The position numbers and the translations under genes are program-made. The notes beneath the pieces were generated by a model. That model was not told the DNA's origin. It searched no databases and saw only the letters and a program-made list of their open reading frames with translations. From Octopus bimaculoides (lineage: Eukaryota), in NCBI RefSeq assembly GCF_001194135.2, contig NC_068987.1:5385068-5449067 (forward strand): a stretch of DNA of 64,000 nt, in the 5' to 3' direction. Of the stretch, positions 4,035-61,556 are shown piece after piece. Each line of letters begins with the position of its first letter. Position 1 is the stretch's first letter.

Positions 4035-4161
4035 AAAAATGTATTTATTGCTGTAAATCTGGTCGTTATTTTACTCAGGGACTATTTTTGGGGTTGTTGC
4101 TGCAATACAGCAATTGTATCTCTTCATTAGAGAGCTCCGTAAATGTGGATTTCTTGCAAGC

Positions 4162-5112
4162 ATGGCAGAGGAAGAGACGATTGTGAAGAAAGAACCTGTT
4201 GAAGCGGTTGACTTGGAAACCAGGATTTTAGAATTATGTAAACAGAACCCTGATGGAGTAGACGATAGTGCTATTCTCGTCGATATGCCTCAGTTTGATG
4301 CTAACCAGAGGGTGCAAGCTATTAACCGGCTCCTCTCCACAGCCAAGATAGATTTGCTGAAAAGTGGTAACAAGTTAGTTTACAAATTAAAGGACCCTTC
4401 ATCGGCCAGTGTTGTGAAAGGCTCTGATAACCAAGAGAAAGTTGTTTACCAAATCATCAAGGAAGCCGGTAACCGAGGGATATGGATTCGTGACATACGG
4501 TATCAAAGTAATTTATTACTGACTCAAGTCAACAAAATATTGAAGAACTTAGAAAGTAAGAAACTTATTAAAGCCGTTAAATCGGTGGCTGCTTCTAAAA
4601 AGAAAGTCTATATGCTTTATGAATTGGAACCAGACCGATCAGTAACGGGCGGAGCGTGGTACAGCGATCAAGATTTTGAATCAGAATTTGTCGAAGTACT
4701 CAACCAGCAGTGTTTTAAATACCTGAATGAGAAAGCTGCAAATGCACGTGAAACTCTTTCAGCACCTATCATGCAGAGAAATGCATCATTCGCTTCTTCG
4801 ACGGACGTCTGGAAATATATATCGGAACTTGGTATCAGTAAAGTGAAGCTTGCTGTTGAGGACATAGAAACTATTTTGGATACTTTAATTTATGATGGTA
4901 AGGTGGAACGTTCTATAGTTGCTGGACCGTGTTCGTCTAGCGGCACATCTGGAAGTGTCACAAAATTATATCGAGCCATTAAGCCATTGATACAGCCGAC
5001 TGGATTAACAAGAATGCCATGCGGTACCTGTCCAGTTTTTCACCTTTGTTCAGAGGACGGTGTCATCTCGCCGACTTCATGTGTATACATGAAAGAATGG
5101 CTTGACTATTAA
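4162..5112 (+). CDS. POLR3F: DNA-directed RNA polymerase III subunit RPC6 (RPC34/C39), single coding exon, 316 aa
   Basis: Motifs GIWIRDIRYQSNL, KLIKAVKSVAASKKKVYML, TGGAWYSDQDFESEFVEVL, DIETILDTLIYDGKVE; C-terminal 4Fe-4S ligands CGTCPVFHLC...SPTSC; ATG at 4162 in good context (GCAAGCATGG); intact ORF. Confidence 0.97.
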   Translation: MAEEETIVKKEPVEAVDLETRILELCKQNPDGVDDSAILVDMPQFDANQRVQAINRLLSTAKIDLLKSGNKLVYKLKDPSSASVVKGSDNQEKVVYQIIKEAGNRGIWIRDIRYQSNLLLTQVNKILKNLESKKLIKAVKSVAASKKKVYMLYELEPDRSVTGGAWYSDQDFESEFVEVLNQQCFKYLNEKAANARETLSAPIMQRNASFASSTDVWKYISELGISKVKLAVEDIETILDTLIYDGKVERSIVAGPCSSSGTSGSVTKLYRAIKPLIQPTGLTRMPCGTCPVFHLCSEDGVISPTSCVYMKEWLDY

Positions 5113-8745: not shown

Positions 8746-11049
8746 TACAGTCCACTTTTGTAGGAGGAGAGGAATATATCTGATTGGATTAACACCAATA
8801 AAGTCATCATCATTTAACGTCCACATTTCCATGGGTTAGACAGAATTTGTTGAAGCAGATTTTCTATGACTGAATGCTCTTCTGGCTTCCTAGCAAGATA
8901 TTTCCCCATGGGCCACATGTGTTTTTCATGGAAGACTGCAAAGGAACAACACCACTTGTATGACAATGATGCTCATTTACAACCATCATGTGATGTCTAG
9001 ATATGGGTACACACAAACACCTAACTATCAACCTATCAATATATATACATAGATACATATGATGTGCTTCTTTCAGTTTCTGTCTTCCAAATCCACTCTC
9101 AAGGCTTTAGTCAGCCTGGGGCTATAATAGAAGACACTTGAAGCACCACACTGTAGGACTGAACCCAAGACCACATGTTTGGGCAAGTATGCTTCTCAAC
9201 CATGTAGCCACATCAGCTTCTAAGCCACACCAAAGCCTAATACAAACTTTGCTGGCAGAAACGTTAGCACGCCGGGTGAAATGTTTAGTGATATTTCGTC
9301 TGTCATTATGTTCTGAGTTCAAATTCCACCGAGGTCGACTTTGCCTTTCATCCATTTGGGGTCGATAACTTAAGTACTGGGGTTGATCTAATCGAGTAGC
9401 CCTCTCCCGAAAAATTTCAGGCCTTGTACGTAGAGTAGAAAATAATATAAGCTTTGAAAAAGAGAGATATACACCACCAAAAAGTTGAGTGGTTCCAGCT
9501 ATATAACATGCAAATAAAGACTTTGGAATTGTTCTTATTATCAAATGGATTAGTAGATAGATTCACTGATCTATTCTAATCTGCTTCTTACAGATTCCAA
9601 AATTTAATATAAATTCTTCTTATGGAAAAAGTGCTATGGCCGAGTATATAGTATTCGTCTCATTATTTTATTTTCTGCTGAAAGCATTGCATTATGGTCT
9701 TAGTGAAATAATTTCTTTGCCTTCAAGAAATCATTCTTAAAATTTGATTTGTTTTCCTTTTTTGGTAGGTACTTTAAAGTAAACCACCTCAGGGACCAGT
9801 CCTTGTTGCAGTTTGGTGGTTTGTGTTCTTCAGTCACCTTGCGAGCTATGCCAGTAGACCACAAGTTCCTGGTTGGGCCTTCCATGCTGGACAGGTCAAA
9901 GGATAGAAGCCAGACTGATATGGACCACCTCTTCTTAATGGTTAAAATAGGTTTACTGAAGGTGAACACCCCTGTCTTTATAAAAGGTTAAGTTTTAGAA
10001 GCATTGACACCAGTTCAAAACCTGGGAGAAAGCTTTCCCTCAGAGAAACATATACTTAGGTAGAGCTGAAAAAACAGGGATCCAATGGGAGAAAAGCAGG
10101 AAAGACAGCCTAGAGTTGGGAGCAGTGGAGAAAAGCTGTCGATGGCCTCTGTTTACTAGGGAGTGAAGGGCTTAAGTCCTTTTAAAAAAGAAATTCTCAC
10201 CAAACAAACTATCGTTAAATTGCCAGAGTTCTTAACTGAGAGTAATCAACTATATCTACCATTTCTTGGCCTGGAGAATGTTTTGGACAGGGTACAGTAC
10301 TGTGTAGTCTAGGGGTCACTAAGTAAACTAAGGTGCAATTGTATTGCTTGTGTAGTTTTTTTTTNNNNNNNNNNNNNNNNNNNNNNNNNNNNNNNNNNNN
10401 NNNNNNNNNNNNNNNNNNNNNNNNNNNNNNNNNNNNNNNNNNNNNNNNNNNNNNNNNNNNNNNNNNNNNNNNNNNNNNNNNNNNNNNNNNNNNNNNNNNN
10501 NNNNNNNNNNNNNNNNNNNNNNNNNNNNNNNNNNNNNNNNNNNNNNNNNNNNNNNNNNNNNNNNNNNNNNNNNNNNNNNNNNNNNNNNNNNNNNNNNNNN
10601 NNNNNNNNNNNNNNNNNNNNNNNNNNNNNNNNNNNNNNNNNNNNNNNNNNNNNNNNNNNNNNNNNNNNNNNNNNNNNNNNNNNNNNNNNNNNNNNNNNNN
10701 NNNNNNNNNNNNNNNNNNNNNNNNNNNNAGTTATCTTCGAAGTCCAGTGGGTTTGTTAAGAATGTATTAGAGATTTGTAAAACATTGTCTCTTGCCGAAG
10801 CTAATCGTTTTTCATTAGAAAGCCAACTTGTTAGTACTTCCCCTCTTCAAATTAGAATTATTAAACGGAAATTGTTTGTAGATTTATTTGAAATAAAAAC
10901 TGTGATGATGTGGCTTTCGTTCTTTTTATTTTTCTGAAATATTAAATGCAGGACTGGAAATAGATTTATTGAAATCTGTCATATTATTTAGAAATTACTT
11001 AGGTTACACCGGTTAGTTTTTTAAAAAATAAAATAATAATAAAAGTCTA

Positions 11050-26033: not shown

Positions 26034-26082
26034 TCACATCATTGTTATTCGTCGGTGATCAATTTTCTCTAATTGGACTAAT
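26034..26082 (-). CDS. MED18: Mediator subunit 18, exon 6 (terminal; PLVQLEKIDHRRITMM*)
   Basis: Resembles MED18 C-terminus PLVHLEKID; TTTGCAG acceptor; phase 2. Confidence 0.93.
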
Positions 26083-26548
26083 CTGCAAAAAGTTAAGGAT
26101 AGTCACAACTTCTAACATTTTGTTTCAAAACAAGCATTTTTTCTTTCAAGTATATATATTTTGTAGTTAGTCACTGTGAGACATTGACCTTCAGGTAAAT
26201 TACGTAGTTCCAGAAGGAAGGCCTTCCTCTTTCAGGTCTGGTTGGTTTTTCTTATTAATGTTTCTGTAACTTAGCTTCTTCTAGGTAGGGGATGTTAGCC
26301 CTACACAAACCCATTTTCACTTCTGAGAAGGGGTTGTCCATAATTAGCCTGGCCTCTCTCCTTTGACTTCTGCAGCATGGAAGGCCCTTCTAGGAGCTTG
26401 CACAAGTCACCGTAACAAGGGCTGGATCTTGTGATACTGCTAAAGTTACAAAAGGGTATGAGGGGAAACTGGGTTTTTGCCCAACCAATAAAAATAAGTC
26501 ATCTACATGAGGGGTAAAAATTATTAAAAAAAAAAAAAAAAAGGATAC
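26083..26548 (-). other. MED18: U12-type (minor spliceosome) GT-AG intron, MED18 intron 5, 466 nt
   Basis: 5' site GTATCCTTTT; branch site TCCTTAAC at 26099-26092, about 10 nt before the 3' AG; phase 2. Confidence 0.9.
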
Positions 26549-26682
26549 GGTTTAAGTTGTTCAGCAAAATTCTTCATGTCATCTTGGAGTAATTCCTGTC
26601 CAGCTGGAGCCACAACTGAGAGTTCCACAAGGTAGGAGAGTGAAAGAGGTTCAATACTTTCTACATTATTTGGTTGCAGCAT
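26549..26682 (-). CDS. MED18: Mediator subunit 18, exon 5
   Basis: MLQPNNVESIEPLSLSYLVELSVVAPAGQELLQDDMKNFAEQLKP; 134 nt, phase 0 to 2. Confidence 0.96.
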
Positions 26683-26979
26683 CTGTAATGGAGACGATAT
26701 AAACTGTTAATCTCTCTAGATATATACATACACAAACACGTTTCAAATACCTGCTCCAATAACCCAAATTGGACACAGCTGCGAAGTGAAGAAACTACTT
26801 TTGATAAATAACAGCTAAGGGGAAATAACTCACGAGCCAATGACGATAATTTGGAGATGTCCTGGTCCGGCCTCATAGTTGTTAGCCCACCTTCCACTCG
26901 TCTCCCAGCTTCTGTATCTATGGATCCTGTTGAACTGTCCAACCTAGAGAGCCCACGTTAAAGTATGACGATACACAGG

Positions 26980-27270
26980 TACCAAATTAACGGGCGAAGT
27001 TATGAAGGCCACTGAAAGAGCCCAGTTAATTAGGGAGTTAGAGAAGATGCAGTTTGGTTCCTTGCCAGGGAGAAGCATTACTCACGCTCTCTATAATTCA
27101 CCAACTACTGAAGTATTAGGAAAAAGCAAACCATTGTACTTAGCGTTCGTTGACCTGGAGAGAGCGTTTGACACAATGATCCCTCATCTGTTGATTGCTG
27201 TGAAAGCTAAAAGAAGAACGATGGTGATTGAAATGGATGGGCAATGTATTTCATTAGAAATAGGGACACA
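26980..27270 (+). mobile_element. RTE LINE reverse transcriptase fragment in MED18 intron 4
   Basis: MQFGSLPGRSITHA...KPLYLAFVDLERAFDT; a more decayed related piece lies at about 10150-10300. Confidence 0.85.
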
Positions 27271-28031
27271 AAAGGGATTAAATGAATCATCAGCCTTGTT
27301 TTAACGGTTAATATCTCATTCTTGCAAGGGTCAGACAGACTTTGATGAGGCAGATTTTCTATGGCTGGATGCTCTTCCTGTTGTCAATCCTCACCTGTTT
27401 CCGAACAAAGTAATATTTCCCTTTAGCCAGTTATTTTTTTTGCCATGGAAGACTGGAAATAAACATCCTTGGTTGTATGATAGTGTTGTTATTTTTACAA
27501 CCATCACATGATATCAAAACAAAGGTACACACAGAGGCTTTGGTTGGCCCAGGGCAATTATAGAAGGTATTTTACCCAAGGTGCTGCACAGTGAGACTGA
27601 ACCTAAGACCACATGGTTGGGAAGCAAGCTTCTTAACCACACAGTCACACATGCCTCTTTTACTTGTTTCAGTCACTTGACTGCGGCCATGCTGGAGCGC
27701 CGCTTTTAGTCGAGCAAATCGACCCCAGGACTTATTCTTTGTAAGCCTAGTACTTATTCTATCGGTCTCTTTTGCCGAACTGCTAAGTTACAGGGACGTA
27801 AACACACCAGCATACACACACACACATATATATATATCGATAGGCTTCTTTCAGTTTCCGTCTACCAAATCCAATCACAAGTTTTGGTCGGCTCAAAGCT
27901 ATAGTAGAAGACACTTGCTCAAGGAGCCACGCAGTGGGAATGAACCCGGAACCATGTGGTTGGTAAGCAAGCTACTTTCCACTTAAACTTTAAAACAAAA
28001 ATGAAAGAGAGAGAAAGGCAACTCAACTTAC

Positions 28032-28110
28032 TCTGAAAATTTTGGAAACGGTAACTTTCATTCTTCCTTTGTGAAAGAAATATCCTTTTATGACATATTC
28101 ATAATCCAGC
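28032..28110 (-). CDS. MED18: Mediator subunit 18, exon 4
   Basis: RLDYEYVIKGYFFHKGRMKVTVSKIFR; TTTCAG acceptor, GTAAGT donor; 79 nt. Confidence 0.95.
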
Positions 28111-28216
28111 CTGAAAGAAAAGATAAATAAAAAAAAAACAGGCATTTTGTATTCAGAATGTTTGAAGCAAAAAAGAAAAGTGAGAAAATATCAGGGAAGT
28201 TTAAAAAATTTTTTAC

Positions 28217-28339
28217 CTGAAACCCATTTCATTAAGAAAAGCGACAACATTATCTGAGGTCCCGACATCAACATAGGTCCTCACCAGTGTGTGACGGGTT
28301 TTGTCCCCGACTTCAGCCTGGCCAATGTAGCGTAAATGC
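28217..28339 (-). CDS. MED18: Mediator subunit 18, exon 3
   Basis: WHLRYIGQAEVGDKTRHTLVRTYVDVGTSDNVVAFLNEMGFR; 123 nt, phase 2 to 2. Confidence 0.96.
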
Positions 28340-28796
28340 CTGGAAATATGTAAACAAAAAAATCATTTAAGGGAACGCAATTTTGTAGTCCAGGGGTAAT
28401 GAGGTGAAAATAGTAAATGGGTCAGTGGTAGGCCAAAAATTGAAATTATATGGAATACTGATTTTAGAATCAGTTTTTTTCATTTTTTTCTTTTTTGGTG
28501 GAACTTAAGAACCAAATATTTTCTGCTCTATATTTAAGAGATGAGGAATTATGTACATTAATTTGGTTGGCCTGGGGCCATAGTAGAAGACACGTGCCCA
28601 AGGTGCTGCACAGTTGCACTGAATCCAAGACCACAAGTCGGGAAGCTGCTTCTTTGCCATACCACCATGGTTGGTATATCATATTTAAGTCTACTATTTC
28701 TGGTATGTTCCTTCCATTTTAAGAATGGTAGAGTAAGTTTTGAAGGAGATTTAGCTGTCAATTCTAGCAAGTTGAGTGACCTAGGAGTGAACTTAC

Positions 28797-28872
28797 CATG
28801 GTGCATTTGCAGCTGTCAGACTATGACGTACTCTGTAGAAAACAGCCTGGCTATTCTGGTTGCTGGTTCCTC
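28797..28872 (-). CDS. MED18: Mediator subunit 18, exon 2
   Basis: RGTSNQNSQAVFYRVRHSLTAANAPW; CATCAG acceptor, TG|GTAAGT donor; 76 nt. Confidence 0.93.
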
Positions 28873-31021
28873 CTGATGAAGAAAAAACCAAAAATATAAT
28901 CATCCTAATATCTTCATGCCTCTTGGCCTAACTAACGAAAAAGACTGGTCCTTAACTATTTAAGGCTAGGTTTAATTTCCCCTTTTATCTTTGAGTAAAC
29001 AGAGTCTTGCAGATAAACTGAGACCAATTTTAAGCAGTTGACCTTCTTGATTACTTTTTATGGGGCGTACTTCAAGCAAGGACCACACTCGAGTGGCAAC
29101 CGTTTGAAGACGTGCATCGTGCGTGCGACACGCAAAATGAAAAAAGCGAAGGCTGTGGCAGCTGCAAAAATTCACGTTCTCACATGGAAGCAGTAATTGC
29201 TCAAAAGGGTGGCCATATTCTTTTCTACTCTAGGCACAAGGCCCGAAATTTTGGGGGAAGGGGCCAGTCGATTAGATCGACTCCAGTACACAAGCGGTAC
29301 TTGATTTATCGACACCGAAAGGACGAAAGGCAAAGTCGACAGCCGTATTGAGTGATAAATGCTTTTGTAATAAATGTTACATTAAAATTATATCTGCCTA
29401 CTAACATTAATTTAGTATTTATAACCAGTTTTATGCATCATAAAAAGTGTCTCAATTTATCTGCAAGGAGAGATTTGAAAGAAATTTGGCTGCTATTTTT
29501 AGTAGGTCGAGTGACAAAGCAGGTNNNNNNNNNNNNNNNNNNNNNNNNNNNNNNNNNNNNNNNNNNNNNNNNNNNNNNNNNNNNNNNNNNNNNNNNNNNN
29601 NNNNNNNNNNNNNNNNNNNNNNNNNNNNNNNNNNNNNNNNNNNNNNNNNNNNNNNNNNNNNNNNNNNNNNNNNNNNNNNNNNNNNNNNNNNNNNNNNNNN
29701 NNNNNNNNNNNNNNNNNNNNNNNNNNNNNNNNNNNNNNNNNNNNNNNNNNNNNNNNNNNNNNNNNNNNNNNNNNNNNNNNNNNNNNNNNNNNNNNNNNNN
29801 NNNNNNNNNNNNNNNNNNNNNNNNNNNNNNNNNNNNNNNNNNNNNNNNNNNNNNNNNNNNNNNNNNNNNNNNNNNNNNNNNNNNNNNNNNNNNNNNNNNN
29901 NNNNNNNNNNNNNNNNNNNNNNNNNNNNNNNNNNNNNNNNNNNNNNNNNNNNNNNNNNNNNNNNNNNNNNNNNNNNNNNNNNNNNNNNNNNNNNNNNNNN
30001 NNNNNNNNNNNNNNNNNNNNNNNNNNNNNNNNNNNNNNNNNNNNNNNNNNNNNNNNNNNNNNNNNNNNNNNNNNNNNNNNNNNNNNNNNNNNNNNNNNNN
30101 NNNNNNNNNNNNNNNNNNNNNNNNNNNNNNNNNNNNNNNNNNNNNNNNNNNNNNNNNNNNNNNNNNNNNNNNNNNNNNNNNNNNNNNNNNNNNNNNNNNN
30201 NNNNNNNNNNNNNNNNNNNNNNNNNNNNNNNNNNNNNNNNNNNNNNNNNNNNNNNNNNNNNNNNNNNNNNNNNNNNNNNNNNNNNNNNNNNNNNNNNNNN
30301 NNNNNNNNNNNNNNNNNNNNNNNNNNNNNNNNNNNNNNNNNNNNNNNNNNNNNNNNNNNNNNNNNNNNNNNNNNNNNTATTCAACGTTGTGCAAATCATT
30401 TGTATATAATTTGTAACAGAAGTAAATCATTCATAAGTTCTAAATGCTTAGCGGCATTTTGTCTGTCTTTAATGTTCTGAGTTCAAATTCCACCGAAGTC
30501 AACTTTGCTTTTCATGATTTCGGGTTCATGGTTGGGGGTCGATGTAACTGACTTACCCTCTCTCCCGAAATTGCTGGCCTTGTGCCAAAATTTGAAACCT
30601 ATATTGGGAACAAGGGAAAAACAAAACAAAACAAAAGACAATTCTACTGTGGAATGCATTCGAAAACACAGTTGGTGCGACGAAGATTTTGTTTAAGTTA
30701 ACAACCTTTGTGCATTCCTCGGTGCCAGGCAAAATCAAGGAAGCCTCTACGTTGCGGCGCTCGACATGCTAGAAATAGCAGTCGAATTTCTCTCCAAACC
30801 ACAGCCTAACATCGTAAAAGGACGTATTTGGTAAGATAGTTCAGGGTACACAATGCCCAAAGCAAACATAAATAAAATAAAGGACAGTCATGATTCATTT
30901 CGGGGCTAAACAACAACAAAAACAAACAAACAAGGATCTCAAAAAGAATTTAACCAAAATGGAATTCGTTAAAAAAAACAAACAAGTCATTGAAAACGTA
31001 TTGAAAGAAATCGGGCCTCAC

Positions 31022-31199
31022 TCATAGCAAACACAAGTTCATGATCATGGAATGTCTCGTAGTTGTTTTCAGCATTATCACAAAGACCCCGTAGTCGGTT
31101 GAGAAGAACTTCACAAGAACTGTCGACGACGCTTCCTTGCAATAAATATTCGTGGAACGGAGTGGCTTGATGCCGATGCGTGGAAACCGAACCTTCCAT
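31022..31199 (-). CDS. MED18: Mediator subunit 18, exon 1
   Basis: MEGSV...EYLLQGSVVDSSCEVLLNRLRGLCDN...ETFHDHELVF; A|GTGAGG donor; the six exons total 639 nt, 212 aa. Confidence 0.96.
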
Positions 31200-44409: not shown

Positions 44410-45305
44410 CTAAGAGACGAATGGTCTGATCTTTGTGCTGCGTAACTGCTTTCGTCTTGTGATTAATTCAATCAAGACGAACGAAGCAATCACCACACAA
44501 ACGGCAAATAAGGCAACAGAAAGGGAGACAATCACCGCCACTATATTGCTACTGAGAGATGTGTCGGCAATATGGTGGGCGTCTTTACTTCCTTTCACCG
44601 AGAACCGTGACGACATCTTAAAGGTGTCTTCATTTTTAACCAACACCGACTGCGACGACAACAGCGGGCCCGATTCGTCGGAAACCGACAAAAGGGTTTC
44701 GTTACCGCCGTTTAACATCTGTTCGTTACAGTTCGACTGCTCACTGCTACCATTTTCTGATGCATTGCGAGACGTGTTTAATTGACACTGCTTATTCAGG
44801 GTTGTCAAACGCATTCCCAGCACACTAAAACTACTTCGGTCGGCGTCGTAAAGCATTCCATAAGAAGTATTGATTTTAATATCTAAGATCGAATGGTACG
44901 TGCCTTGAAGATTCCCAACTCGTGTAACCGTTACGTTCTCCTGAGTTAGCTTGTAGACGTGAGTAGCTGTTTCGTTGGTGTAATAATCAAGTAAAACTTG
45001 TGACGATGGTTCATCTCCGAGTGTTGACGGACTGACAGCAACCAACGAACTGGCGTTGTGTTGGCTTTTCAGGGAAAAAGCCTGGTAACCTATGTACTGT
45101 TCCAACGGTGGCAAGATGAAGTCGTTCTTGTACATAGTCTGTTGGTCATACGAACTTACATTCGTGATATACATCACTTGGATCGGTTTAACCGATTTTA
45201 ACATGATATAGCATTCATTTAGAAAGTCCAATTGAAGCGCATCTGAGTCTTTGACCATATATGATGCCACTGTGGTTTCCAGGGTAACCGTCACGTTAGT
45301 TTCAC
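44410..45305 (-). CDS. IgGFc-binding-domain membrane protein, terminal exon (end of domain, Ser/Thr-rich stalk, TM helix, short tail)
   Basis: TTTTTGCAG acceptor, phase 1; KSVKPIQVMY...ILPPLEQY motif; TM IVAVIVSLSVALFAVCVVIASFVLIELI followed by RRK; 896 nt, intact. Confidence 0.9.
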
Positions 45306-53799: not shown

Positions 53800-53830
<31 letters not shown>

Positions 53831-53853
53831 GTAGAATGAAATAACTTCCTTAC

Positions 53854-54363
53854 CTGTAATTTTCAGAGTGACAAGTATTTCTGGCGTCAAAGGTACAGCA
53901 ACGAACATTTTCCCCCATGTAGTGACCGGTGGCAACATTTCCGAAGTGGATATCGGAGGTTCAAAACACACAGTACCATTTCGTGGGTCATATGCTGATA
54001 TACCAGCAACTAGAACTCCGACTGGTCGGCTGGCGCTTATTTTCACACCGTCCATCAAATTGCCATCGTCCAAGGCCAGAACCTCGTTTGGTTTAATGGT
54101 GTAATTGAACTCCGTGTCCCCAAGTCCGCAGATAAGTAGGTCACACAGAGAACTGTTGCTGTTGACGGTCAGCGTGACATTGGTCAAAGTTTTTGGAATA
54201 CCTTGAGGTAAGATGTAAACCGTTGAAGACATGTTTATAGACGTACTGGGGGTCATGATGACGTAATCAGTTCCGAAAGTGTCTGTAGGATACAACTGGC
54301 TCCTGTCCCCTTTCTGCCGGCCGTACATAACACACACATCTCCTGTGGCTATTAGCAACAAAG
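53854..54363 (-). CDS. IgGFc-binding-domain membrane protein, internal exon
   Basis: LYPTDTFGTDYVIMTP, ISASRPVGVLVAG and EMLPPVTTWGKMFVAVPL are FCGBP N-terminal domain motifs; TTATTTTGCAG acceptor (weaker alternative at 54348), G|GTAAGG donor; 510 nt, phase 1-1. Confidence 0.9.
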
Positions 54364-54506
54364 CTGCAAAATAATAAAAATGTGATAATAATAATAAAGA
54401 TGATGATGATGATGGTGGTGGTGGTGATAACAGCAGTAACAACAACAACAACAACGACAACAACAATTCCATCCGGCGTGCTAACGATCCTGCCAGCTCA
54501 CTGCTT

Positions 54507-60065: not shown

Positions 60066-61556
60066 CTGGAATGCATTAAAAATGAATATGCCTAGGTCTC
60101 CACGAAATATCACATGTACTAGAACACATACTTTCCAAGATAAGGAAATAAAGTAGAACGAAAATATATGCACGGGTGTAGGTTTTTAGTTGAATTTGTT
60201 TCAGCTGTTACGGTTACGGCCAAAAACAAAGCTATAAATACAAGGAGATTTTATCTTTGAATCATTCGAAGCAATCAGGAAACTATCGTGAAAAAAAAAA
60301 AGAAAAAAACACCACCATCAAAGAGGAAAAAAAAAACTGCATGTAAAAAGGCTAAATTTCGCTATGAATTTGGAAGTCATCCAATCAATAGCTTTTTTTG
60401 GTTAAGAACATCTGAACTTGATAGGTATGTTAATGGATTTGACCGGTAGCTATGTGAAACACATCAACACGTTAAAACTGACGAAAGAAAAGAAAAAAGA
60501 ATACTAAAATATTAAGAGTTAATAATTGTTTATTCAATGTGACGAGAACTTTCAGATTTAAGAGTGAGTGGGGAAATGATAGTATTTTGCGTGCTCGCTT
60601 TTCCCACAACTAGAGACGAAAGGGAAATGAAATTATCACAACCGATAATCCCAAACAGGTCGCGTTTTCTGTTTATGAGAAGAATATTTGCTCTTAACTG
60701 CGTGTGCTAAGAACCATGATAAAAGTTATTTCCATGATTTTTTAATGGATATTTGAAAAGAAAAAAAACCCCCGAATGTCATGTAGCCAATTTCCATCAG
60801 TGGTGCATAAATAAGAATGTAGTGTCCTTATAAGTATTATGTACGGAAGCTTATTTTTTTTTCAGGGTGAGGAAAATATTTTATCGATACGATGTAATAC
60901 CTGAATCGAATTCATGATCCAGAAATTAGGATTGATATCGTGAAGTCACCAATAACGTTTTCTTTTTAGAGCAAATGCTTGAAGAAATAAGAAGAACAGG
61001 ATATTGAAATGTTCGTACTTACAAGATCAGAAGCAAGTAATTTGTTATAATAATATTTTCAATAGTAAACAATACGATAATAAACAAGTTTTCGTTAGCC
61101 ATGGAGTTGGCTTACTCATAGGTTCTTTGCGATGCTGTATCGCAAGATGAGGGACTCTCAATGTGGTCACTTGGCCTGTTAGAAAGCGCAGCCAAACTTC
61201 CGCAAATCAAACGCTTACTGTTTAAAAGAAAGGAAAGGATACATTCGATTATCTAGTCCCAAGCACTCTTAAAAAGATGGGATTGCCAAGGCTGGAATGC
61301 TTGCGATCATATGTTCCGCTTCGTCAGAGCTGATCTGGGGCTAAACAACACAGCACTTGAATTCATATATCAAAGACAAAACTAGTGTAAAGGGGAAGTG
61401 TATTAGAAGCAGAGAATAATTGACTGAACACGGTTTCGTCCTCAATATATCATGTAGATAGACTGAAAAGCATTCATCAGTAAGCTACACAGACACCCGA
61501 GGATACCCCAAACATCTTCTGTTTGCTATATATATATATATGTGTGTGCATATATA

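What the first reader, a model, noticed from the sequence alone, without database searches (positions are those of the whole stretch)
26083..26548. Minor-spliceosome (U12) intron in MED18
Seen: donor GTATCCTTTT, branch site ATCCTTAAC about 10 nt from the AG, and phase 2. All other introns reconstructed here have U2-type donors. Known: these are the diagnostic U11/U12 recognition sequences, and U12 introns are rare and often rate-limiting. Retention would delete the conserved LVxLEKID C-terminus. Inference: Mediator head assembly may be tied to minor-spliceosome activity in this lineage. GT-AG termini mean annotators would treat it as ordinary.
Basis: partly seen in the sequence, partly recalled or inferred. 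Interest (0 to 1): 0.7.

Follow-up and report, generated by a model that had tools for sequence, protein, structure and literature searches.

The report
Ancient U12-type intron in octopus MED18
The last intron of the Octopus bimaculoides MED18 gene is a real minor-spliceosome (U12-type) intron, but it is inherited from the earliest animals rather than special to octopus, so it is an ordinary, well-preserved example of a known kind.

Summary
Observation confirmed. The window is Octopus bimaculoides. MED18 lies on the minus strand in six coding exons, and the rebuilt protein is 100% identical to NCBI's MED18. Intron 5 is exactly 26548..26083 (466 nt, phase 2, inside an invariant Pro codon). It starts GTATCCTTT (9/9 to the U12 donor consensus, 3/9 to the U1 consensus). 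TCCTTAAC (8/8) places the branch A 10 nt from the AG. The other four introns have U2-type donors.

Each motif alone occurs at chance frequency in the window. The case rests on their position and on comparison with other species. The intron at the same alignment column and phase carries GTATCCTT plus a TCCTTRAY-like box 9-15 nt from the AG in cuttlefish, bivalve, abalone, annelid, spider, hemichordate, octocoral and sponge. The octopus and cuttlefish intron interiors are only 40% identical.

An amoebozoan has a U2-type intron (GTATGC) at the same site. A shark and a mouse lack the intron and all other ancestral MED18 introns.

The U12 call is therefore sound, but "in this lineage" is wrong: the intron is at least metazoan-old. 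The proposed link between Mediator head assembly and minor splicing is untested speculation. Retention would give ...KPYPFFFFF-stop. This is a new member of a known kind, of low to moderate interest.

The parts
26034..31199 (-). MED18 coding region. Six coding exons: 31199-31022, 28872-28797, 28339-28217, 28110-28032, 26682-26549 and 26082-26034 (stop TGA included).
   Evidence: tblastn probe; exact junctions and a 639-nt CDS; 100% identity to NCBI O. bimaculoides MED18; Pfam PF09637 at E 4.5e-42; E 7e-75 to human MED18 in PDB 7EMF chain R.
26083..26548 (-). Intron 5, the last intron: 466 nt, phase 2, GT-AG, U12-type.
   Evidence: The orthologous introns are U12-type in nine other animals.
26540..26548 (-). 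U12-type 5' splice site GTATCCTTT, the inferred site of U11 and then U6atac pairing.
   Evidence: 9/9 to RTATCCTTT and 3/9 to the U1 consensus CAG|GTAAGT. GTATCCTT is invariant in all nine other metazoan orthologs mapped.
26526..26542 (-). Run of 17 T directly after GTATCC. It supplies positions +7 to +9 of the donor consensus.
   Evidence: It is absent in cuttlefish, whose donor reads GTATCCTTTTATTT, so the run is octopus-specific and not needed for the signal.
26524..26526 (-). First in-frame stop (TAA) if the intron is retained. The product would end ...EQLKPYPFFFFF.
   Evidence: Translation.
26092..26099 (-). U12-type branch-point box TCCTTAAC. The predicted branch A at 26093 is 10 nt from the 3' end of the intron.
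   Evidence: It is conserved exactly in cuttlefish, and 6-7/8 boxes lie 9-12 nt from the AG in the other animals.
26083..26084 (-). 3' splice site AG.
26257..26400 (-). Dispersed-repeat fragment inside the intron. It is a passenger, not part of the splicing signals.
   Evidence: 73% match to 10005-9862 on the opposite strand.

Best explanation
Window 26548..26083 (minus strand) is a constitutive U12-type (minor-spliceosome) GT-AG intron, the last intron of Octopus bimaculoides MED18. Inferred mechanism, from the established minor-splicing pathway: the U11/U12 di-snRNP recognises the intron as a unit, with U11 pairing to GTATCCTT at the 5' end and U12 pairing to TCCTTAAC so that the A at 26093 bulges out as branch point. 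U4atac/U6atac.U5 then joins, U6atac replaces U11 on the donor, and the two exons are ligated. Ligation rebuilds the invariant Pro197 codon (CC|A) and adds the conserved tail LVQLEKIDHRRITMM. The intron is not a cephalopod novelty. Its position dates back at least to the common ancestor of animals and Amoebozoa, and its U12 identity at least to the last common ancestor of animals. It was deleted, together with every other ancestral MED18 intron, on the line leading to jawed vertebrates. Shown here: the sequence signals, the gene model, and positional and signal conservation. Inferred: actual use of the minor spliceosome, and any kinetic or regulatory consequence.
For: 1) Signals: donor 9/9, branch box 8/8, branch A 10 nt from the AG, and only 3/9 match to the U1 consensus. 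The other four introns of the gene score 4-7/9 to U1, at most 4/9 to the U12 donor, and have no correctly placed branch box. 2) The gene model is exact: 100% identity to the public MED18 protein. 3) Orthology: in a 22-sequence protein alignment, the intron falls at column 243, phase 2, in all 10 non-vertebrate animals mapped and in Balamuthia. 4) GTATCCTT is invariant in Acanthosepion, Tegillarca, Haliotis, Owenia, Parasteatoda, Ptychodera, Dendronephthya and Corticium. Each has a TCCTTRAY-like box with its A 9-15 nt from the AG. None of the roughly 40 other introns in these genes has GTATCC. 5) Selection on the signals only: between octopus and cuttlefish, the donor is 10/10 identical, the branch-to-AG segment is 86% identical and the interior is 40% identical. 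6) In the sponge Corticium this intron is 456 nt while its five U2 introns are 52-170 nt, as expected if a different machinery with different length constraints removes it. 7) Phase 2 fits the known bias of minor introns away from phase 0. Molluscs are reported as relatively rich in minor introns, and Octopus sinensis is among the species analysed (PMC10639083).
Against: No RNA evidence for the octopus junction was examined here; support is the annotated protein and comparative data. No minor snRNA gene lies in the window (Rfam scan empty), so the presence of the machinery in this genome rests on the literature. No formal intronIC or PWM score was computed. The T-run after GTATCC is octopus-specific, so part of the 9/9 match (+7 to +9) may be incidental, although cuttlefish also has TTT there.
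Confidence: 0.93

Rival explanations
1. The intron is a regulated bottleneck. Slow U12 splicing of the last MED18 intron would limit production of full-length MED18, tying Mediator head (Med8-Med18-Med20 jaw) assembly to minor-spliceosome activity.
For: The intron identity is sound. It has been kept as U12-type for more than 600 My in many phyla. Retention truncates a conserved tail: L195 and P197 are invariant and K203 and D205 are at least 90% conserved across 22 species. Because it is the last intron, a retained transcript would carry no downstream exon junction, so by the usual EJC rule it would escape NMD (inference).
Against: No expression or retention data were examined. Jawed vertebrates dispense with the intron entirely and Balamuthia has a U2-type intron at the site, so MED18 function does not need it. 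Long conservation is typical of U12 introns in general, and a survey of more than 3000 genomes argues that neutral processes explain much of it (PMC10639083). In the AlphaFold model the tail after helix 183-193 is mostly coil, with confidence falling to 71 for residues 201-210, so its structural importance is not established here.
Confidence: 0.1
2. It is an ordinary U2-type GT-AG intron that resembles the U12 consensus by chance.
For: Each motif alone occurs at chance frequency in the window. A second GTATCCTTT at 61242 is clearly a chance hit. The last 20 nt are 70% pyrimidine, not very different from the U2 introns.
Against: Both motifs lie exactly at the homology-defined junctions with correct spacing, a joint chance of about 1e-9 per intron as I estimated. 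Both are conserved at the same site from sponge to octopus while the interior is not. The donor matches only 3/9 of the U1 consensus.
Confidence: 0.02
3. The intron can be spliced by both systems, or is on its way to conversion to U2-type, as appears to have happened at this site in Amoebozoa.
For: Balamuthia has GTATGC, one base away from GTATCC, with a CTAAT branch at the same position and phase. Conversion of minor to major introns is a recognised route (PMC10639083). Tegillarca (TACTTAAC) and Haliotis (ACCTTGAC) have weaker branch boxes.
Against: The octopus signals are perfect, with no sign of decay, and there is no nearby alternative GTRAGT donor at the junction. The direction of change in Balamuthia cannot be established from one outgroup.
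Confidence: 0.05

Closest known systems
U12-type (minor, U11/U12-dependent) spliceosomal introns, GT-AG subclass
   Same: Donor /GTATCCTTT. Branch box TCCTTAAC 10 nt from the 3' splice site. Poor U1 complementarity. Non-zero phase. Deep positional conservation as U12-type across animal phyla.
   Different: Nothing structural differs. The host gene is not a minor-intron gene in human or mouse, because vertebrate MED18 lacks the intron, so it is missing from the vertebrate-centred lists.
Catalogued minor introns of molluscs, including Octopus sinensis (Larue and Roy 2023, PMC10639083; database introns.info)
   Same: Same class of feature, in the same clade, identified by the same signals. The survey reports molluscs as relatively enriched in minor introns.
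   Different: I could not query the database, so I do not know whether this intron is listed. No paper in the searchable library holds MED18 together with 'minor intron' or 'U12-type', and the seven that hold MED18 and 'U12' are unrelated by title; I opened only the most relevant, which was unrelated.
Regulatory 'rate-limiting' minor introns described in vertebrate cells (retention controlled by U6atac level)
   Same: It is a U12-type intron whose retention would introduce an early stop.
   Different: No evidence of retention or regulation exists for this intron. This is a resemblance in potential only.

Membership tests
U12-type intron (GT-AG subclass) | 5' splice site matching /RTATCCTT(T) | tested here: met
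   GTATCCTTT at 26548-26540, 9/9.
U12-type intron (GT-AG subclass) | Branch-point box TCCTTRAY close to the 3' splice site (roughly 10-15 nt, from my own knowledge of the family) | tested here: met
   TCCTTAAC at 26099-26092, 8/8, with the branch A 10 nt from the intron end.
U12-type intron (GT-AG subclass) | Poor fit to the U2-type donor, and no dependence on a long polypyrimidine tract | tested here: inconclusive
   The U1 consensus match is 3/9, against 4-7/9 for the other four introns, which meets the first half. Pyrimidine content of the last 20 nt is 0.70, not clearly different from the U2 introns at 0.70-0.90.
U12-type intron (GT-AG subclass) | Orthologous intron is U12-type in other species (the comparative criterion used by U12 catalogues) | tested here: met
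   Same alignment column and phase, with GTATCCTT plus a placed branch box, in 9 other animals from sponge to hemichordate.
U12-type intron (GT-AG subclass) | Removal depends on U11, U12, U4atac and U6atac snRNPs | not testable with these tools
   This needs knock-down or in vitro splicing experiments.
U12-type intron (GT-AG subclass) | The host genome encodes the minor spliceosome | not tested
   No snRNA lies in this 64-kb window. The literature reports minor introns in Octopus sinensis and enrichment in molluscs (PMC10639083).
MED18 (Mediator head subunit, Pfam PF09637) | Full-length match to the Med18 family and orthology to animal MED18 | tested here: met
   Pfam E 4.5e-42 covering profile positions 1-237 of 243. 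100% identity to NCBI O. bimaculoides MED18. E 7e-75 to human MED18 in solved Mediator structures. AlphaFold model with mean pLDDT 86.5.
Regulated or rate-limiting minor intron ('molecular switch') | Measurably higher retention than neighbouring U2 introns, and a response to minor-snRNA levels | not testable with these tools
   No RNA-seq or perturbation data are available here.

The most novel reading that the evidence does not exclude
MED18 is an unrecognised, pan-metazoan minor-intron gene. Its last intron has been held as U12-type since before sponges diverged because slow minor splicing meters the supply of full-length MED18, and so the Med18-Med20 jaw of the Mediator head. Jawed vertebrates escaped this control when a reverse-transcribed copy erased all ancestral introns.
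Probability: 0.08. Interest if true: 0.55.

Novelty: new member of a known kind. Interest (0 to 1): 0.22.

Why it matters
The finding adds one clean, deeply conserved example to the set of animal U12-type introns. It also shows that MED18 belongs to the ancestral metazoan set of minor-intron genes, although vertebrate-centred lists cannot contain it. The gene offers a compact natural series for studying what happens to minor introns. The U12 type is retained from sponge to octopus. A U2-type intron occupies the same site in an amoebozoan. The intron is deleted, along with all its neighbours, in jawed vertebrates. None of this changes current understanding of minor splicing or of Mediator. A regulatory link would matter, but it has no support yet.

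Tried and rejected
1) Motif enrichment in the window gave nothing: RTATCCTTT and TCCTTAAC occur at chance frequency. Significance comes only from their placement and conservation.

2) I checked the second GTATCCTTT at 61242-61234 (minus strand) as a possible second U12 intron and rejected it. There are stops in all three frames within 10 codons upstream and no placed branch box.

3) I considered whether the donor might be an artefact of a retroposon poly(A) tail on the plus strand, since A17 abuts GGATAC. Only a 144-nt interior piece (26257-26400) is repeated in the window, and the donor is conserved in species without the T-run, so I rejected this.

4) The Periplaneta look-up returned a spliced transcript contig (L009), so the insect state of this intron could not be determined.

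5) Literature searches for MED18 with 'minor intron', 'U12-type' or 'U12' found nothing relevant. A search on Mediator complex plus minor spliceosome gave one unrelated plant review.

6) An Rfam scan of the window for minor snRNAs or other RNAs found no hit.

7) The structure prediction meant to judge the importance of the C-terminal tail was indecisive. The tail after helix 183-193 is mostly coil in the monomer model, with falling confidence.

Full report
**What is in the window**

The window is from Octopus bimaculoides. A tblastn probe with human MED18, written from memory and used only as a lead, placed MED18 on the minus strand between about 31.2 kb and 26.0 kb. Reading the junctions gave six coding exons: 31199-31022, 28872-28797, 28339-28217, 28110-28032, 26682-26549 and 26082-26034. 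They sum to a 639-nt open frame. The 212-aa translation is 100% identical, end to end, to the NCBI protein named MED18 of O. bimaculoides. It matches Pfam Med18 at E 4.5e-42 and human MED18 from solved Mediator structures at E 7e-75. The gene model is therefore secure, and the public annotation already uses these splice sites.

**Checking the observation**

- Intron 5 is exactly 26548..26083, which is 466 nt and phase 2.
- It interrupts the codon of Pro197 (CC|A), one of only ten invariant residues in a 22-species alignment.
- It begins GTATCC followed by 17 T.
- TCCTTAAC lies at 26099-26092, with its second A 10 nt from the terminal G.
- The donor matches the U12 consensus RTATCCTTT at 9/9 and the U1 consensus CAG|GTAAGT at only 3/9.
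- Introns 1-4 begin GTGAGG, GTAAGT, GTAAAA and GTAAGT. They match U1 at 4-7/9 and the U12 donor at no more than 4/9, and they have no branch box in the right place.
- Reading through the retained intron gives ...EQLKPYPFFFFF and then TAA at 26526-26524, so the tail LVQLEKIDHRRITMM would be lost.

**Is it more than chance?**

The motifs alone are not. The donor 9-mer occurs 3 times in the window against 1.39 expected, and the branch 8-mer occurs 2 times against 1.95 expected. The other GTATCCTTT, at 61242, has stop codons in all frames just upstream and no placed branch box, so it is a chance hit.

What chance does not explain is both motifs sitting at junctions fixed independently by protein homology, with the right spacing. 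From the counts above I estimate this at about 1e-9 per intron. The comparative result below points the same way.

**Comparative test**

I fetched the genomic loci of MED18 orthologs and mapped each protein onto its locus with an exact spliced alignment (mapping). I then projected the introns onto a protein alignment.

All ten non-vertebrate animals share introns at alignment columns 79-81 (phase 1), 107 (phase 2), 159 (phase 2), 187 (phase 0) and 243 (phase 2). Four of them also have an intron at column 228 (phase 0). The column-243 intron is the one in question. Its signals are:

| Species | Group | Donor | Branch box | Branch A to intron 3' end (nt) |
|---|---|---|---|---|
| Octopus bimaculoides | cephalopod | GTATCCTTTT | TCCTTAAC | 10 |
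| Acanthosepion | cuttlefish | GTATCCTTTT | TCCTTAAC | 15 |
| Tegillarca | bivalve | GTATCCTTTT | TACTTAAC | 11 |
| Haliotis | gastropod | GTATCCTTCC | ACCTTGAC | 9 |
| Owenia | annelid | GTATCCTTTA | TCTTTAAC | about 10 |
| Parasteatoda | spider | GTATCCTTTA | TTCTTAAC | 11 |
| Ptychodera | hemichordate | GTATCCTTTA | GCCTTAAC | 12 |
| Dendronephthya | octocoral | GTATCCTTTA | TTCCTTAAT | 12 |
| Corticium | sponge | GTATCCTTCA | TCCTTTAC | 12 |

GTATCCTT is invariant in all of them. No other intron of these genes starts GTATCC.

Between octopus and cuttlefish, the first ten intron bases are identical and the branch-to-AG segment is 86% identical. The interior is 40% identical, which is close to what an optimised alignment of unrelated AT-rich sequence gives. 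In the sponge this intron is 456 nt, while its five U2-type introns are 52-170 nt. Together this is the pattern expected of a functional U12-type intron under purifying selection on its recognition signals.

**Age and losses**

The amoebozoan Balamuthia mandrillaris has an intron at the same column and phase, but it reads GTATGCAGTT...CTAAT... and is U2-type. Balamuthia also shares the column-107 and column-187 positions. The position is therefore at least as old as the common ancestor of animals and Amoebozoa. With a single outgroup I cannot say whether the U12 state is older than animals or whether Balamuthia converted it.

The mouse-like rodent Apodemus and the stingray Hemitrygon lack this intron and all the other ancestral positions. 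They keep a single coding intron at a different site, column 40, phase 1. Loss of every ancestral intron together is what reverse-transcript-mediated loss would produce, a route discussed in PMC10639083. This explains why MED18 is not among vertebrate minor-intron genes. Molluscs and Ptychodera have lost the column-228 intron.

**How it most likely works**

By the established minor-splicing pathway, which is inference and not tested here:

1. The U11/U12 di-snRNP binds GTATCCTT and TCCTTAAC together, with A26093 as the branch point.
2. U4atac/U6atac.U5 joins, and U6atac takes over the donor.
3. The exons are ligated, which restores the Pro197 codon.

Whether splicing is slow or regulated is unknown. 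If the intron were retained, the stop would lie in what is effectively the terminal exon. The usual exon-junction rule would then not trigger NMD. This is inference.

The AlphaFold model (mean pLDDT 86.5) shows helix 183-193 followed by a mostly extended tail whose confidence drops to 71 for residues 201-210. The tail is conserved: L195 and P197 are invariant, and K203 and D205 are conserved in at least 90% of sequences. Its role was not established.

**Comparison with what is known**

The feature meets all sequence-level and comparative criteria for a GT-AG U12-type intron. Dependence on the minor snRNPs and the presence of their genes in this genome were not testable in the window (the Rfam scan was empty).

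Larue and Roy (PMC10639083) classified introns in more than 3000 genomes. They include Octopus sinensis among the analysed species, report molluscs as relatively rich in minor introns, and argue that neutral processes explain much of minor-intron evolution. Their database probably lists this intron, but I could not check. No paper in the searchable library links MED18 with minor or U12 introns.

**Verdict**

The U12 interpretation is supported with high confidence. The phrase 'in this lineage' is wrong, because the intron is ancestral to animals and was lost in jawed vertebrates. The proposed tie between Mediator head assembly and minor-spliceosome activity is untested, and I give it about 0.1. 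This is a new member of a known kind, with interest around 0.2.

Noticed in passing
window 4159-5112 (+): An uninterrupted 317-aa ORF encodes a full-length RNA polymerase III subunit Rpc34/POLR3F (Pfam PF05158, E 1.8e-99, whole profile). In this window it is a single-exon gene, which suggests an intronless gene or a retrogene.
   Followed up: partly
window 53828-54472 (-) and 44410-45294 (-): Two large exons carry the N- and C-terminal halves of an IgGFc_binding domain (PF17517, E 4e-17 and 8e-5). The second ends in a hydrophobic, transmembrane-like stretch. They probably belong to one large gene on the minus strand.
   Followed up: partly
window 61234-61242 (-): A second exact GTATCCTTT. There are stops in all three frames within 10 codons upstream and no branch box with a placed AG downstream, so it is a chance occurrence.
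   Followed up: yes
L002 (Apodemus) and L008 (Hemitrygon), whole loci: Jawed-vertebrate MED18 has lost all five or six ancestral metazoan coding introns, including the U12 one. It has a single coding intron at a position (LLQ|G, phase 1) not seen in any invertebrate mapped. This pattern is compatible with replacement by a reverse-transcribed copy.
   Followed up: partly
L012 (Balamuthia mandrillaris) 2293-2370: The amoebozoan MED18 has a 77-nt U2-type intron (GTATGCAG...CTAAT) at exactly the position and phase of the animal U12 intron, one base away from GTATCC. It also shares two other animal intron positions. This may be a minor-to-major conversion, or it may be the ancestral state.
   Followed up: partly
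L005, L006, L010, L011 (alignment A2 column 228, phase 0): A sixth ancestral MED18 intron (after ...AGQ|E) is present in the annelid, spider, octocoral and sponge. It is absent from the four molluscs and the hemichordate.
   Followed up: yes
window 29525-30377 and 12 other N-runs: Thirteen assembly gaps lie in the window. One of them (853 N) is inside MED18 intron 1, so that intron's stated length (2149 nt) is nominal.
   Followed up: yes
window 26257-26400 versus 9862-10005: A 144-nt piece of the U12 intron's interior is a dispersed repeat, with 73% identity to a copy on the opposite strand.
   Followed up: partly
PMC5493778, section 2 (literature): [quoted passage not shown] The MED18 orthologs of an octocoral and an annelid mapped here carry clean U12-type signals, which agrees with the later survey (PMC10639083) rather than with that statement.
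   Followed up: partly
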